Assembly: GCA_964252035.1 (NCBI GenBank)
Contig: OZ176202.1
Direction: 5' to 3' (one strand)
Length of the DNA: 64,000 nucleotides
From: Podarcis erhardii
Lineage: Eukaryota
The notes beneath the pieces are model-generated. The model was not told where the DNA came from and ran no database searches. It saw only the letters and a list, made by a program, of their open reading frames with translations. Below, piece by piece: positions 11,315 to 58,999 of the stretch. Numbering within the stretch: the first letter of the stretch is position 1; every line of letters begins with the position of its first letter. A program made the position numbers and the translations under genes.

Positions 11315-44988
<33,674 letters not shown>

Positions 44989-46204
44989 CACACTCTGAAA
45001 CATAGCATCTGCCAGTTGGAAAAGCCAGAGTTTCCTACCATGTCAATTTTATCTTTAATTTCTCCAGAAAGCTCTTTGGCATCAGGCAATGGAGGTCTTT
45101 GGGAAGACGTTGAGGCCCTTGTGTTTCTCTGTCGAGGGAAATGGTGCTTTCTGATTACCCCTTAAAGAAAAGGCACAGTTATGTTAATTTCTTAAAGACT
45201 GAGGCTAGCTTCGACCCATTTCAGAATATACATGTCCATTACAAAAAAGGGAACTTTACATCAACTTTTAAGCCCCAGGAACTTGGAGGAGTAGAGTTAG
45301 GTCTCTGTACTTTGGGGCTGCTCATTTGTTAAATCATGGATCTACAGTCCTAAGCAAACAAACTTACAAGTAAAAATCTTAAACATTACATCTCTTCATA
45401 GTAGCTTATGTTTATCCTTTTCAATCCACCAATTCATTTTACATAAATAAATAAAACTCCTTCCTGTGTTTGGTGGGGTTTTTTCAGGTTTCTGAGCCTC
45501 TAGGTAGGCCAAAGATCCTCAATGGATTTAGTTTTATTGTGGATCTCCTTTTATGCCAGTGCAATTTCCAAGACCAACTCAGAAAATTCCTTATTTGTAT
45601 AGAATTAAAGTCATTTTTATAACTGCTTCTTTAGCACTCAGCTTTTTATTTGCCTTAAAATGCTTTTGAGCAGTTCACTTACAGCATCCGTGTTTCAGAG
45701 GCATTTCATTGTTGTCACTATTATTTGGCACCTGACAGGTTTGTGTCTTATAGCTGTTATTGTAGATTGTAACATCTGTTTTGTAAAGTTTTCTTTTTGA
45801 AGTCAGATTTTGGTTCTCAGGCTAACAACTTGTTTATGGCAGTTCGTATGCTGGTATTACTAAAAGGCTAAAATATATTTTGCCTTGTGTATGTACATAT
45901 ATAATTATAAAAAAAGGTTTTTCATGTTACTTGCAATTTGGTGTACTGTATTATATTGTCAGTTGAAATGCTGCAGCTTTGACTTGGTATCCTGACCATA
46001 TCAATGAAAACATTGGTCTCTGAAAAACAAAAGGTTATCCAGGGAAGTAAATTAACTGATAAGAAAATTGTGTGTCTGACACAGTACCAGAACAAGAATC
46101 ACATTCCATTGTATTGATGGGGAAAACAAACTTTAAGCTGTCATTCTTGCAAGAAGTAAATATAATACCTCTATTATTGGGTGTTAAAATGACAATTAGA
46201 GTAA

Positions 46205-46290
46205 AAGCCATCTGGTTGGCACTGTGCGAACAGGCTGCTAAACTAGATGAGCCTTTAGTCTGATCCAGCAGGGCTCTACTTAGGTTCACC
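46205..46290 (+). mobile_element. CR1-type 3' end fragment within the putative 3'UTR
   Basis: gccatctggttggcactgtgcgaacaggctgctaaactagatgagccttt...tgatccagcagggctc. Confidence 0.55.
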
Positions 46291-47914
46291 TGGGATGCTG
46301 AAACAGCTTGTTCTTTCTTCCCCATGTTCTTGTTTTCTAAAACTATTAAACAATGCAGTGTAGAATCTCTTACTCCCTTCTGTGAATATAGATGAAGTTT
46401 ATTTTTGTACATGGCCAGACATTTTGTATACCAAATAAGCTCAGCTTGAGTTCTAATGTATCTAGATTATTCTTTAGTGTCCATTAACAAGCTAAAATTG
46501 TAGAGGCTTTTCAGGATAAATAACAGCAAGTAAACTGGAAGATGTAATGAGCTCAGCATGGAATTGGAAACTCAGATCTGGTTCAAAGCTGCTTTGTAAT
46601 TTTACGCAAGTCTCGTCACCTCTCTAACTCACTTGCTTTGTCCTGCATCTGAAAAGAAAGTAGTTTATACAACTTCTTGAAGCACATTCAACCTTAAGAG
46701 GAAAGTTGGGTCACAAAGGCACACAGCCTTCCCCAAAAGTGTTTTTGACTTGATGTGCTTTTTAACTTTTTGCAGTATTTTTTTAAAGCTAAAAGCAAAA
46801 CATTATAAAGTAATTTAAACTGAGGTGTCCAAAGCTGCTCTGGATTTTCTTTCCTTTGATGAGACATAAGGAAGAGAGATGCTTTAACAGGATGGCTGTA
46901 GAGAATGTGAGACAGTTGAATGTGGGTTTGGGGCCGGGGGGCTGAGGGAGGTTAGTAAGTAAATCATTTAACAAATTGACAAAAGCAGTTGTTAAGGCTT
47001 TAATCCAAATAAACTTGTTTAAAAGTGCCTCCATTAAAGCACATGGATCAAGCTTCCAAAAGTGTTGAAGTGCACAGAAAGTTTAATTTTCTGAACAAGT
47101 TTTCACTTGGGGCCTAATACCATAGGTCTGAAAGATACCAGCATAGGTTAGCTTCCACATGATGAGCACAAGCCAGTTGAAGTTAGCTCTTTGAAACTAG
47201 AGCATTCAAGCAATGAAAAGGGACTTCAGGGTGCTTCAATTTAACTGAATCATGTCCAGTATTTAAGCTTAGTATGCTGGGTTATGTAATATGGATACAG
47301 CTGTCCTCCCTGCAATCATGTTAATATGGACAATGTAGTTTAAAAGTACCGTAAATACTTCCAGTATCCATACACAGACAATGACTCATTGCTTTCAGGT
47401 CCACTTTCCATTTAAGTAGATTTACAGACTAAACCTGTGGATGTTGACCATAATACATTTTGAAGCAACAGGACTGCTTTTGCAATAGACTAATTAATAT
47501 GACCCTTTCTACCAGCATAGATATAAATATGGATAAAAAAGATCACATGGTGCATGGAAAGTGAGGATTGCTTCATATAAAGAGGATTTAACATATTCTT
47601 CCTCTCTCACTATCTCCAGAAAAGTGCCTTGCACCTGCAACTGTCTGTAGTGGCAAGTAATTGTGCACATTAAGCAGTCACTAAAATAAGTCATTTCTCA
47701 CATTACATGTCAGTTGATTCATGTGGAACAAGTAGAAACATTCCTTGGTGGCAACATGTACTGTCTGTCTCCAAGACTGTCATGTGCAATGCTAATTCCC
47801 AGACGACCATTTTTGGTAGGGGTGTGCTTTACAATAGTATTTTCACACAGTAAAAAACGTAACATAGCAAGTGGCCCCTTTGACTTCTGACTGTCAAGGA
47901 CCTTAAAGGTATAT

Positions 47915-48140
47915 TCAAAACAAAAAAAATTCCTTCCAGTAGCACCTTAAAGACCAACTAAGTCAGTTCTTGGTATGAGCTTTCGTGTGCATGCACACTT
48001 CTTCAGATATGGTATCTGAAGAAGTGTGCATGCACACGAAAGCTCATACCAAGAACTGACTTAGTTGGTCTTTAAGGTGCTACTGGAAGGAATTTTTTTT
48101 GTTTTGACTATGGCAGACCAACACGGCTACCTATCTGTAA
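47915..48140. mobile_element. Penelope-like element fragment: pLTR piece with an inverted duplicate
   Basis: gaaagctcatacc...ttagttggtctttaaggtgctactgg is a reptile PLE pLTR-type sequence. Perfect 95-bp arms (47915-48009 / 48013-48107); direct repeat CTTAAAGGTATAT at 47902-47914 and 48141-48153. Confidence 0.85.
48010..48051 (+). ncRNA. Minimal type-I hammerhead ribozyme motif
   Basis: UGGUAU (stem I) - CUGAAGA - A - GUGUG CAUG CACAC (stem II) - GAAA - GC - UC / AUACCA (stem I'); predicted cut after C48045. Confidence 0.75.
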
Positions 48141-50376
48141 CTTAAAGGTATATGTAAATGTACCCCTGACCATTAGGTCCAGTCGCGGACGACTCTGGGG
48201 TTGCAGCGCTCATCTCGCTCTATAGGCCAAGGGAGCCGGCGTTTGTCCGCCGACAGCTTCTGGGTCATGTGGCCAGCATGACTAAGCCGCTTCTGGCGAA
48301 CCGGAGCAGCACACAGAAACGCCGTTTACTTTCCTGCTGGAGCGGTACCTATTTATCTACTTGCACTTGATGTGCCTTCGAACTGTTAGGTAGGAAGGAG
48401 CTGGGACCGAACAATGGGAGCTCACCCTGTCGCAGGGATTCAAACCGCTGACCTTCTGATTGGCAAGCCCTAGGCTCTGTGGTTTAGACCACAGTTCCAC
48501 CCATGTCAAGGACCTTAGGACCCCCAAAATGTACCGCTTCCAACAAATCTGTTCAATGTATTCTGATGTGCACACAGCTGCCACACTTGGAAACAGTGTT
48601 CCATTTATTAAATGGAGAAAGTAGATCGTGGATATTCATTTACATTTACAAATGTGTTACTGGAATTGAAGTTAATGAAGCAATGCACAAAGTACATCAG
48701 ATCACATGTGGTACACTGAATTTGGGTCATATGATTGCAAATGCATGTGGTATGACCAACAGGATTTTCATTTAGGTGTTAGGTTGTGTTTTAAAACAAA
48801 TATTAAAAAAATGAGTACCTTGCAATATTTATCCTTCTGAATCGGGGGCACGTATGTGAGATGTGGCCTGCATCAGGTTTCCATCTCCTCCGCAGTTCCT
48901 CTGCACCCTCAACAGCAAGCTGCTGGTGGAGACTTTCCCTGCTGGAGCCTGTGAAAGGAAAGCATAGCCCTGATAATTGTGTGAACAGAGGTATTAGTTG
49001 CATGGGAAAATGTGGGTGGGTTAGTGTGAATGGGGTGTCACCCCTCCATAGGCCCGTATGCAACCCCTGACCTCTGTCCCCTGACAGAATGCAGCCCTCA
49101 CCTCAACTTAAGTTTTTTCTCCTTTTCTAGATACACCCTCAAAAGGCAATTGCTTTTTAAAAGAGCAAATTGAGCGAAGGAAAGAAGCCAACAACAACTG
49201 TTCTTTTAAACAACAAAAGCAATCTAAATTTGTTAGGCTACAGAAGCTGCCTTACTGGTTCAAACTTGAATGAAAGGAAAGGGAAAAACCAGTGTTCACT
49301 CTTATCGAAAGCATTGTATACATTAATATCCCTAAGCTACGTTAGGAATGGAACAATGATGATTGCTTAAACTGAATGACAAAGGGGTAGAACTTCTATG
49401 CCTGTTTACAAATCCAGTGCAAATTTTCCTGATTTTTAAAATATATACACTGCTTTTAAATGTTTTTACAATTTGTTCATCCTTGAGTTAGACTTTTGCT
49501 TGCAGATTATTTTAGTTTATTGTTGATTTAGCAGTTGACCATTTCAATAGTATATATATTGATCCTGGAAAAGCCTTAAAAAGTTAGGTACCTCTTAAAC
49601 ATTATGTACAGCAATGAACTCACTGTAAACAATAGCATGTTATTTACCACCATCTCCTTACATGCAGGGTTCCAGGTAAATGTTGGATTGGAGACTGTCA
49701 AAATACACAAAGCCAGAAGCATGTGCCAATTCAATTTGTCTCTAGACATACAGGGCCACTTAAGTCTCCATGTCATACTGTTTTAGTTGGCATCAAATCA
49801 TAACGTTAGCAAGGTAAGGCCTGATGGTCTAAAGACTTGTAATTGTAAACCTGGCTTTGGTGCAAATGGAAACTCTGGAAATAAGATCTGGAGCACAAAT
49901 CCTTATTAACCCTTTTCACACAGATCTAAGTGCAGGAATAAAGGTCAATTCACCAAGTCATGGCTGTACATCTGTATTGTATTATTTTTAGTCTAAACGC
50001 ATTGACTCCAAGCTAACTTTTACTCATACTCAAGACCTCTTTTTGGAAAACGAAAACTTTAAACAAGTTATGTAACAACTAACAAATGTTGCACTTTCTG
50101 TATATGAATCAATATTTAAATAACTTATTTTTCTCCATTTGCTGTTCTTAAATAATGTAAGTAGCTGTAATATACCAGTACCAATAAGTCTTTGCAGTTT
50201 GCTTCAACCTGAAAAAGCGGTGTATAATAAAAAATGAGAGAAAATGAGGAGGGGGAAAAAATCTTACGAATTTGTAAATATTACTGTGCTCTGTTACATT
50301 TAGCAAAAAGAGGAAACAAAAGGAATTTTCTGTGTATGAAAACTTCTCTATAATTATGACTTATTGTTCATAGGAA

Positions 50377-50386
50377 AATAAATAAA
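50377..50386 (+). terminator. Candidate distal polyadenylation signal (overlapping AATAAA x2)
   Basis: aataaataaa followed about 20-45 nt later by U/GU-rich tgtatcttctttgttagtgttagtaattttt. Confidence 0.5.
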
Positions 50387-58660: not shown

Positions 58661-58999
58661 GTAAGGTAAAGGACCCCTGGACGGTTAAGTCCAGTCAAAG
58701 GCGACTATGGGGTGTAGCGCTCATCTCGCTTTCAGATCGAGGGAGCTGGCGTTTGTCCACAGACAGCTTTCCGGGTCATGTGGCCAGCAGGACTAAACCG
58801 CTTCTGGCGCAATGGAACACTGTGACGGAATCCATAGCACACAAAAATACTGTTTAGCTTCCCGCCACAGCAGTACCTATTTATCTACTGGTATACGTTC
58901 GAACTGCTAGGCTGGCAGAAGCTAATTCGAACTGCTGACCTTCCAATCAGCAAGCCCAAGAAGTTCAGTGGTTTAGACCACAGTGCCACCTGCATCCCT
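58661..58999 (-). mobile_element. Sauria (Squam1) SINE with 10-bp TSD
   Basis: gtaaggtaaaggacccctgg...gtggtttagaccacagtgccacc; CATTTGTTAT at 58651-58660 and 59000-59009. Confidence 0.92.

What the first reader, a model, noticed from the sequence alone, without database searches (positions are those of the whole stretch)
48010..48051. Hammerhead ribozyme core in the sense strand of the probable SASH1 3'UTR
Seen: the complete catalytic core (CUGAAGA...GAAA...UC), a 6-bp stem I (UGGUAU/AUACCA) and a palindromic stem II (GUGUGCAUGCACAC), on the + strand about 3 kb after the SASH1 stop and upstream of the best poly(A) signal. Established: Penelope-like element pLTRs carry minimal type-I hammerheads whose stem III is only a short palindrome (here AGCU); these generally need to dimerise to cleave efficiently. 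Inference: a retroelement has placed a potential self-cleavage site in a tumour-suppressor/pigmentation gene mRNA, recalling the rodent Clec2 3'UTR hammerheads. The minus-strand copy has only a 3-bp stem I.
Basis: partly seen in the sequence, partly recalled or inferred. Interest (0 to 1): 0.8.

Follow-up and report, generated by a model that had tools for sequence, protein, structure and literature searches.

The report
Penelope retrotransposon palindrome with locked hammerhead
The hammerhead ribozyme motif is really there, but it is the standard minimal ribozyme of a Penelope-like retrotransposon, sitting in a young 226-bp head-to-head insertion whose two arms pair perfectly, so the ribozyme fold is locked out and this is an ordinary transposon relic downstream of SASH1.

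Summary
At 48010-48051 (+) lie a 6-bp helix I, CUGAAGA, one extra A, a helix II closed by G10.1-C11.1, GAAA, the palindrome AGCU and the cleavage-site C at 48045. A min-HHR descriptor finds this motif and its minus-strand mirror, and nothing in 200 shuffles. No Rfam hammerhead model matches, even at E<=10.

The motif belongs to a 226-bp insertion (47915-48140). It has two perfectly complementary 95-nt arms, a 3-nt centre, a 33-nt tail at one end only, and 13-bp target-site duplications. This is the published Penelope-like element layout: an inverted 5'-truncated copy plus a one-sided 30-40 bp tail.

In plus-strand RNA the arms form a hairpin of -193 kcal/mol. The hammerhead fold costs about 60 kcal/mol more (P about 5e-43) and is never favoured during transcription. 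Only one sense copy exists, so there is no partner in cis for dimerisation. Published minimal PLE hammerheads are inactive as monomers.

SASH1 is confirmed, and its stop codon lies 3,022 nt upstream. Whether SASH1 mRNA reaches the motif is undecided, because a strong poly(A) signal lies at 45446.

Earlier notes of this scan report the same kind of palindrome at other loci of this genome. Verdict: ordinary transposon relic, low interest.

The parts
47902..47914 (.). Left target-site duplication, CTTAAAGGTATAT
   Evidence: Exact 13-bp direct repeat of 48141-48153, abutting both ends of the insertion.
47915..48009 (-). Antisense (inverted) 5'-truncated PLE terminal copy without a tail. It carries the mirror hammerhead core at 47974-48009 on the - strand, with a helix I of only 3 bp.
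   Evidence: 100% reverse-complementary to 48013-48107 over 95 nt. Descriptor hit on the - strand. Core match.
48010..48012 (+). 3-nt centre (TGG) of the palindrome. It supplies the outer 3 bp of helix I on the + strand and is probably the first 3 nt of the sense copy.
   Evidence: That it is native sequence is inferred: a random triplet would pair with CCA once in 64.
48010..48051 (+). Minimal type-I hammerhead motif. Helix I is 48010-15/48046-51. CUGAAGA is 48016-22. The extra A is 48023. Helix II is 48024-28/48033-37 with G10.1-C11.1. GAA is 48038-40. The palindrome AGCU is 48041-44. C17 is 48045, so cleavage would fall between 48045 and 48046.
   Evidence: The features match the PMC4209133 list.
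48013..48107 (+). Sense 5'-truncated PLE terminal copy (right arm of the palindrome).
48108..48140 (+). 33-nt one-sided 'tail' with an AC-rich stretch (CAGACCAACACGGCTACC). It forms the 3' end of the sense copy.
   Evidence: Present at the right end only. [quoted passage not shown]
48141..48153 (.). Right target-site duplication, CTTAAAGGTATAT
44707..44988 (+). Last SASH1 coding segment (C-terminal SAM domain), with the stop codon TAA at 44986-44988.
   Evidence: ORF list. PDB 2dl0 SASH1 SAM, E = 1.2e-31. Pfam SAM_1/SAM_2. Sequence.
45446..45455 (+). Tandem AATAAATAAA with a GU/U-rich downstream element. This is a candidate proximal SASH1 poly(A) site; transcripts ending here would exclude the motif.
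   Evidence: G+T fraction 0.78-0.80 at +10..+50, a run of six T. A heuristic only.
49937..50386 (+). Candidate distal poly(A) signals (AATAAA at 49937, 50226 and 50377/50381). Transcripts ending here would include the insertion in a long 3'UTR.
   Evidence: A heuristic only.

Best explanation
The motif is the terminal hammerhead of a Penelope-like retrotransposon (PLE). It was delivered as a short 226-bp 'head-to-head' insertion (47915-48140) into an AT-rich site about 3 kb downstream of the SASH1 stop codon. The insertion has two 5'-truncated copies of the element's 3' terminus in opposite orientation. One copy starts at a proximal reverse-transcription start point. The other starts 33 nt further out, which gives the one-sided tail. 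The two copies are joined within 3 nt of each other just upstream of the ribozyme core.

The most likely origin is inferred, not shown. The PLE enzyme nicked and extended both target strands, and one cDNA switched template onto the other. This produced a perfect palindrome flanked by a 13-bp target-site duplication.

In the parent element, the hammerhead is thought to process multimeric PLE RNA as a dimer, helped by the element's protein. In this copy it is a silent relic. Any transcript through it, on either strand, folds into a 95-bp perfect hairpin that sequesters helix I and the whole core. No second sense copy is available for the dimeric helix III. If long SASH1 3'UTR isoforms include it, what the mRNA gains is a long perfect dsRNA hairpin, not a working self-cleavage site.
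For: Motif and significance: (0 of 200 shuffles).

Features of metazoan PLE min-HHRs listed in PMC4209133, all present:
- an unpaired nucleotide between A9 and 10.1 (A48023)
- a G10.1-C11.1 pair
- a long helix II
- palindromic 15.2-16.2 (AGCU) with no real helix III

Insertion anatomy:
- The arms are 100% complementary over 95 nt, with centre TGG, a 33-nt tail and a 13-bp TSD.
- PMC11167929 shows that the Anolis Poseidon enzyme cuts and extends both strands, prefers AT-rich targets, and starts reverse transcription at two sites in an AC-rich stem-loop 111-118 nt after the position equivalent to A9. Here the 3' end lies 118 nt after A9 (48022), in an AC-rich stretch.

Locking of the ribozyme:
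- The hairpin MFE is -192.8 kcal/mol. Forcing the hammerhead fold gives -132 kcal/mol, so P is about 5e-43.
- In prefix folds the right arm zips onto the left from 8 nt onward, and helices I and II never appear.
- The minus-strand RNA folds the same way, at -194.8 kcal/mol.

Activity of such ribozymes:
- Single min-HHRs gave no detectable cleavage, and dimers cleaved only weakly (PMC4209133).
- The Anolis PLE HHR was inactive without protein, and no RNA-seq reads ended at its cleavage site (PMC11167929).
Against: No PLE reverse-transcriptase or GIY-YIG coding sequence lies in the window, and I could not obtain other copies of this family (blank scans). Assignment to PLEs therefore rests on architecture and on the ribozyme's features, not on homology to a named consensus. 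The hammerhead differs in sequence from the one lizard PLE consensus I could read, Poseidon_Ac.

All three frames downstream of the ribozyme are closed (read). In Poseidon_Ac the ORF starts inside the ribozyme, so this may be a different or a non-autonomous PLE family.

Thermodynamic predictions ignore helicases, RNA-binding proteins and ADAR editing, which could loosen the hairpin in vivo. The two-strand priming and template-switch origin is inferred, not shown.
Confidence: 0.85

Rival explanations
1. One reading: the + strand hammerhead is a functional, conditionally active self-cleavage site in long SASH1 3'UTR isoforms. It would work by dimerising in trans with other PLE-derived transcripts, or with help from PLE protein or chaperones, and would lower SASH1 mRNA levels as the Clec2 hammerheads do.
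For: The catalytic core is intact and helix I has 6 bp on the sense strand. The isolated 42-mer adopts the two-helix fold. The motif lies about 3 kb after the stop codon, upstream of plausible distal poly(A) signals. PLE HHRs can cleave as dimers or with protein (PMC4209133, PMC11167929). PLE-derived retrozymes that overlap exons in Xenopus lie mostly in 3'UTRs (2026 preprint).
Against: The fold is excluded thermodynamically (P about 5e-43) and at every transcription length. There is no tandem sense partner. A trans helix III of AGCU/AGCU is worth only about -2.5 kcal/mol. Monomeric min-HHRs are inactive in vitro. No Rfam hammerhead model matches. A strong proximal poly(A) signal at 45446 may end most transcripts before the motif. 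The perfect arms and TSD point to a young, unselected insertion.
Confidence: 0.04
2. The relevant property is the hairpin, not the ribozyme. In long SASH1 3'UTR isoforms the 95-bp perfect inverted repeat would act as a dsRNA element. It could be a substrate for ADAR hyper-editing, Dicer/Drosha processing into small RNAs, or Staufen-type decay, as inverted-repeat Alus do in human 3'UTRs (the Alu analogy is from my own knowledge). That would modulate SASH1 expression.
For: The hairpin is -192.8 kcal/mol with 95 consecutive pairs. Many miRNA-precursor covariance models score it at 50-68 bits purely for its hairpin shape.
Against: All miRNA matches fall far below their gathering scores (for example 67.8 against 95) and hit both strands equally, which marks a generic palindrome. 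It is unknown whether the site is transcribed as part of SASH1. No conservation or expression data are available. Earlier notes of this scan (unchecked) report many such palindromes in this genome, so this one has no special claim.
Confidence: 0.08
3. The structure is not a retroelement. It is either a MITE-like DNA transposon with long terminal inverted repeats or a fold-back assembly artefact, and the hammerhead resemblance is incidental.
For: A 193-bp perfect palindrome flanked by direct repeats looks superficially like a MITE. Perfect palindromes can arise as sequencing or assembly chimeras.
Against: The element is asymmetric, with a 33-nt tail at one end only. A 13-bp TSD is atypical of DNA transposons, while variable TSDs, a one-sided tail and an inverted truncated copy are PLE hallmarks. 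The motif carries four independent features of PLE min-HHRs that a chance match would not be expected to have. An assembly fold-back would not create a clean TSD around an insertion.
Confidence: 0.03

Closest known systems
Minimal type-I hammerheads (min-HHRs) of metazoan Penelope-like elements (Cervera & De la Pena 2014, PMC4209133; Lunse, Weinberg & Breaker, RNA Biol 14:1499, cited in PMC6765202)
   Same: The core is CUGANGA...GAAA...UH. There is an unpaired nucleotide between A9 and G10.1, a G10.1-C11.1 pair, a long helix II and an open helix I. There is no true helix III, only a palindromic 15.2-16.2 pair (AGCU), so activity is expected only as a dimer. The paper also notes dual motifs close together on opposite strands.
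   Different: This sequence variant has a fully palindromic 14-nt helix II. It is not the one shown for any element I could read. This copy has no tandem partner and is base-paired to its own antisense copy.
Poseidon_Ac (PAc), Penelope-like element of Anolis carolinensis (Frangieh et al. 2024, PMC11167929)
   Same: The ribozyme layout is the same: CUGAGGA, an extra U, helix II, GAAA, CG, UC in the consensus. Insertions end about 0.1 kb past the ribozyme in an AC-rich region. There are two start sites 30-40 nt apart (the 'tail'). Targets are AT-rich, both target strands are cut and extended, and the HHR is silent without protein.
   Different: The nucleotide sequence differs, so this is not the same family. 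In PAc the ORF begins inside the ribozyme, whereas here all three frames close within about 50 nt. PAc is described in tandem arrays, not as a short palindrome.
Complex tandem/inverted PLE insertion structures (Craig et al. 2021, PMC8557442, Fig. 2)
   Same: An inverted 5'-truncated copy lies directly next to a sense copy. A 30-40 bp tail is present at one end only. Truncation at the 5' end is heavy.
   Different: Both copies here are truncated to about 0.1 kb, at almost the same point. The whole insertion is therefore little more than a perfect palindrome, with no ORF or full pLTR.
Discontinuous hammerhead in rodent Clec2 3'UTRs (Martick et al. 2008, cited in PMC4209133; details from my own knowledge)
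   Same: A hammerhead core on the sense strand downstream of a protein-coding gene's stop codon.
   Different: The Clec2 ribozyme has a full three-helix architecture with tertiary contacts. It is active as a single unit, is conserved among orthologues and has been shown to reduce expression. The present motif lacks helix III and loop contacts, is transposon-borne and young, and is sequestered in a hairpin.
Metazoan non-LTR retrozymes (Cervera & De la Pena 2020, PMC7229834; Li et al. 2026 preprint 10.64898/2026.07.22.740005)
   Same: PLE-related type-I hammerheads in short non-coding repeats. In Xenopus, the copies that overlap exons are mostly in 3'UTRs.
   Different: Retrozymes are head-to-tail tandem repeats that allow dimeric cleavage and circRNA formation. 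Here the two copies are inverted, not tandem.

Membership tests
Metazoan PLE minimal type-I hammerhead (min-HHR) | Invariant core: C3 U4 G5 A6 N7 G8 A9, G12 A13 A14, A15.1-U16.1, H17 | tested here: met
   48016-48022 CUGAAGA, 48038-48040 GAA, A48041/U48044, C48045. Descriptor hit.
Metazoan PLE minimal type-I hammerhead (min-HHR) | One unpaired nucleotide between A9 and G10.1 (PMC4209133) | tested here: met
   A48023 (the hit needs extra = 1).
Metazoan PLE minimal type-I hammerhead (min-HHR) | Helix II longer than the canonical 4 bp and closed by G10.1-C11.1 | tested here: met
   G48024-C48037. There are 5 bp with a 4-nt loop in the fold, and up to 6-7 bp given the 14-nt palindrome.
Metazoan PLE minimal type-I hammerhead (min-HHR) | No stable helix III; palindromic positions 15.2-16.2, allowing a dimeric helix III | tested here: met
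   AGCU at 48041-48044. The AGCU/AGCU duplex is worth only -2.5 kcal/mol.
Metazoan PLE minimal type-I hammerhead (min-HHR) | Open helix I of about 4-6 bp (type I topology) | tested here: met
   6 bp on the + strand (48010-15/48046-51) and only 3 bp on the - strand copy.
Metazoan PLE minimal type-I hammerhead (min-HHR) | Located in the terminal repeat of a Penelope-like element | tested here: inconclusive
   PLE hallmarks are present: TSD, an inverted 5'-truncated copy, a one-sided 33-nt tail and an AT-rich target. No RT/GIY-YIG ORF lies in the window and no other family copies could be fetched. The sequence differs from Poseidon_Ac.
Metazoan PLE minimal type-I hammerhead (min-HHR) | Mg2+-dependent self-cleavage 3' of C17 (as a dimer or with protein) | not testable with these tools
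   Needs in vitro transcription and cleavage assays. Folding predicts that the active fold is inaccessible in the genomic context.
Rfam hammerhead families (Hammerhead_1 RF00163 and its clan) | Covariance-model score at or above the gathering threshold | tested here: not met
   No hammerhead match at gathering score on the whole window, nor at E<=10 on 291 nt or 63 nt. This is expected if the models require helix III and loop features that min-HHRs lack.
Non-LTR retrozyme | Head-to-tail tandem repeats, each carrying a type-I hammerhead | tested here: not met
   Only two copies of the core in 64 kb, in inverted orientation.
Clec2-type mRNA-embedded hammerhead | Complete three-helix ribozyme able to fold and cleave as a single unit within the mature mRNA | tested here: not met
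   There is no helix III. The fold is excluded in context. Presence in the mature mRNA is undetermined.
miRNA precursor families (mir-559, MIR1222 and others) | Score at or above the family gathering threshold, on one strand | tested here: not met
   The best score is 67.8 bits against a threshold of 95, with equal scores on both strands, which marks a generic palindrome.

The most novel reading that the evidence does not exclude
Long SASH1 3'UTR isoforms of this species include the insertion. Its 95-bp perfect hairpin, or less likely a hammerhead transiently freed by helicases, editing or PLE protein, then measurably alters SASH1 mRNA fate through editing, small-RNA production, decay or cleavage. 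That would be a lineage-specific regulatory change created by a Penelope insertion.
Probability: 0.06. Interest if true: 0.45.

Novelty: new member of a known kind. Interest (0 to 1): 0.15.

Why it matters
It matters little beyond annotation. The locus is a clean, young example of the head-to-head Penelope insertion type. It has a perfect palindrome, a one-sided 33-nt tail and a 13-bp TSD, and its end points agree with the two reverse-transcription start sites mapped biochemically for an Anolis PLE. It could therefore serve as one data point for models of how PLEs make inverted structures.

For ribozyme scans it is a caution. An intact hammerhead core on the sense strand of a gene says nothing about activity when the antisense copy lies next to it. 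The motif should not be reported as a regulatory ribozyme of SASH1.

Tried and rejected
1. Rfam covariance models gave no hammerhead hit: whole window at gathering score, then 291 nt and 63 nt at E<=10. Only sub-threshold miRNA and sRNA hairpin models matched, on both strands, and I rejected these as generic palindrome matches.
2. BLAST of the element against the window found nothing beyond the two arms, so no family alignment or covariation test was possible.
3. Two scans of metagenome contigs for the core were blank. This says nothing about vertebrate genomes.
4. The search of earlier findings by sequence was blank.
5. Lunse et al. 2017 (PMC5785218) is not held, so I cite it only through the review PMC6765202.
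6. I read the Poseidon_Ac consensus from the supplement and compared it by eye. The layout is the same and the sequence is different. I did not run an alignment, because that would have meant typing a long sequence that has no reference.
7. The tRNA scan of 44.9-52 kb was negative.
8. Poly(A) heuristics cannot decide where the 3'UTR ends.
9. I did not run the large protein search to name the host species.
10. The MITE and assembly-artefact readings were considered and rejected (see rival explanations).

Full report
**Observation**

The + strand at 48010-48051 reads as follows:

| Element | Sequence | Coordinates |
|---|---|---|
| Helix I, 5' strand | UGGUAU | 48010-15 |
| Core, C3-A9 | CUGAAGA | 48016-22 |
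| Extra nucleotide | A | 48023 |
| Helix II | GUGUGCAUGCACAC | 48024-37 |
| G12 A13 A14 | GAA | 48038-40 |
| A15.1 to U16.1 | AGCU | 48041-44 |
| C17, cleavage site | C | 48045 |
| Helix I, 3' strand | AUACCA | 48046-51 |

The one detail it did not mention is the unpaired A between A9 and G10.1.
- I wrote an RNAmotif-like descriptor for the 'min-HHR' of Cervera & De la Pena. It finds this site once on the + strand (helix I 6 bp) and its mirror at 47974-48009 on the - strand (helix I 3 bp).
- The same descriptor finds nothing in 200 dinucleotide-preserving shuffles of the window, both strands.
- The 30-nt core occurs only at those two places, with 0 expected by chance.
- Cut out of its context, the 42-mer folds into helices I and II (-11.7 kcal/mol, z = -2.2).
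- Infernal with all Rfam families gives no hammerhead match. I tried the gathering score on the window and E<=10 on 291 nt and on 63 nt. The curated models therefore do not recognise it. This fits a ribozyme without helix III, but it remains a failed membership test for those models.

**What surrounds the motif**

- The motif is the inner end of the right arm of a palindrome. Arms 47915-48009 and 48013-48107 are 100% reverse-complementary over 95 nt, with TGG between them.
- To the right of the right arm lie 33 further nucleotides (48108-48140, containing CAGACCAACACGGCTACC). They have no counterpart on the left.
- The whole 226-bp block is bracketed by an exact 13-bp direct repeat, CTTAAAGGTATAT (47902-47914 and 48141-48153). 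This is a target-site duplication in an AT-rich site.
- No other copy of the element lies in the window, and no ORF in the window is long enough to be its reverse transcriptase.
- Directly downstream, 48160-48400 is another interspersed repeat, with a 73% identical copy at 58673-58923.

**What it is**

Cervera & De la Pena (PMC4209133) list the features that recur in metazoan PLE hammerheads beyond what their search pattern required:
- the G10.1-C11.1 pair
- a long helix II
- the palindromic nature of 15.2-16.2, with no real helix III

All four are present here.

Craig et al. (PMC8557442) describe PLE insertions as heavily 5'-truncated. [quoted passage not shown] That is the anatomy seen here.

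Frangieh et al. (PMC11167929) showed several things for the Anolis Poseidon element:
- The enzyme nicks and extends both target strands.
- It prefers AT-rich DNA.
- It starts reverse transcription internally, at two sites in an AC-rich stem-loop 111-118 nt after the ORF start.
- The tail is the sequence between the two start sites.

In the Poseidon_Ac consensus the ORF's A is position A9 of the hammerhead. The layout there is CUGAGG|A-U-helix II-GAAA-CG-UC, the same as here with different letters. In the window, the sense copy ends 118 nt after A9 (48022 to 48140) in an AC-rich stretch, and the inverted copy ends 33 nt short of that.

I therefore read the block as two 5'-truncated copies of a PLE 3' terminus. 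One was primed on each target strand from the distal and the proximal start site, and they were joined where one cDNA switched onto the other. The assignment to PLEs rests on these hallmarks. The joining mechanism is inference.

The family is not Poseidon_Ac itself. All three frames close within about 50 nt after the ribozyme (read), so it may be another PLE family or a non-autonomous one.

**How it behaves as RNA**

- Folding 47880-48170 gives a hairpin of -192.8 kcal/mol in which every nucleotide of the ribozyme pairs with the left arm.
- Forcing hammerhead helices I and II with an open core gives -132 kcal/mol. The active fold then has an equilibrium probability of about 5e-43.
- The left arm is transcribed first and the palindrome centre is only 3 nt long. 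I therefore folded growing transcripts. From 8 nt into the right arm, the favoured structure is the zipper onto the left arm. Helices I and II appear at no transcript length.
- The minus-strand transcript behaves the same way (-194.8 kcal/mol) and has only a 3-bp helix I.
- The dimeric helix III that such ribozymes need has no partner in cis, because each strand carries one sense copy. In trans, AGCU/AGCU is worth about -2.5 kcal/mol.
- Two isolated copies are instead predicted to form a domain-swapped dimer through the palindromic helix II (-42 against -25 kcal/mol for two monomers). That dimer still lacks helix III.
- Published biochemistry points the same way. A single min-HHR showed no detectable cleavage, and dimers cleaved only weakly. 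The Anolis PLE hammerhead cleaved only in the presence of its protein, and no RNA-seq reads ended at its cleavage site.

**The SASH1 context**

- The ORF at 44707-44988 is the C-terminal SAM domain of SASH1 (PDB 2dl0, E = 1.2e-31; Pfam SAM_1/SAM_2). It ends with TAA at 44986-44988.
- The motif starts 3,022 nt after the stop codon, on the same strand.
- Candidate poly(A) hexamers lie both before and after it. A tandem AATAAATAAA at 45446-45455 has the strongest GU/U-rich downstream element. Weaker hexamers lie at 45604-47033. After the motif there are hexamers at 48607, 48802, 49937, 50226 and 50377/50381.
- These are heuristics. Without transcript data I cannot say whether any SASH1 mRNA contains the insertion.
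- PLE-derived hammerhead repeats in 3'UTRs are not unusual in themselves. [quoted passage not shown]

**Age**

The arms show zero differences over 95 pairs, and the 13-bp duplication is intact. This indicates a recent insertion, or homogenisation between the arms. This is inference; no rate was measured.

**Comparison and verdict**

- The motif is a new copy of a known kind of ribozyme in a known kind of insertion.
- It resembles the Clec2 3'UTR hammerheads only in location. It lacks their complete single-unit architecture.
- It is not a retrozyme, because the copies are not tandem.
- It does not pass Rfam's hammerhead models.
- If the insertion is transcribed at all, the only realistic consequence for the host gene is a long perfect dsRNA hairpin.
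- Earlier notes of this scan report the same type of Penelope palindrome with hammerheads at many other loci of this genome. Follow-up agents reached the same 'relic' verdict at three of them. I used those notes as leads only. The tests above were made on this locus.

Noticed in passing
window 48160-48400 and 58673-58923: A GC-richer interspersed repeat, possibly SINE-like, lies directly 3' of the Penelope insertion. A 73% identical copy lies about 10.5 kb downstream on the same strand. ARAGORN detects no tRNA-like head.
   Followed up: partly
window 43000-43563: A GC-rich block (GC about 0.61) lies between the large SASH1 exon-like ORF (40727-42010) and the last coding exon. It has long overlapping ORFs on both strands (122-187 aa, Arg/Pro/Gly/Ala-rich). 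It could be a CpG island or a repeat, and it remains unexplained.
   Followed up: no
window 45446-45455: A tandem AATAAATAAA is followed by TGTGTTTGGTGGGGTTTTTT, 458 nt after the SASH1 stop codon. By sequence heuristics this is the best candidate proximal poly(A) site, which would give a short 3'UTR isoform lacking the insertion.
   Followed up: partly
window 48024-48037 (and 47985-47998): Helix II of this hammerhead variant is a perfect 14-nt palindrome. Two isolated ribozyme copies are therefore predicted to prefer a domain-swapped dimer through helix II and helix I (-42 against -25 kcal/mol) over the textbook helix III dimer. Whether this is a feature of the family is unknown.
   Followed up: partly
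window 48022-48140: All three reading frames downstream of the ribozyme close within about 50 nt. In Anolis Poseidon_Ac the ORF starts inside the ribozyme. This suggests a different or a non-autonomous PLE family.
   Followed up: no
whole window: AWTAAA hexamers are over-represented on both strands: 218 observed against 148 +/- 12 in dinucleotide-preserving shuffles. This probably reflects A/T-rich repeats and low-complexity tracts.
   Followed up: no
window 15937-16866: A 309-aa ORF on the + strand overlaps the stretch that another first-stage note (s1-225636) reads as a SASH1 exon extension. I did not examine it.
   Followed up: no
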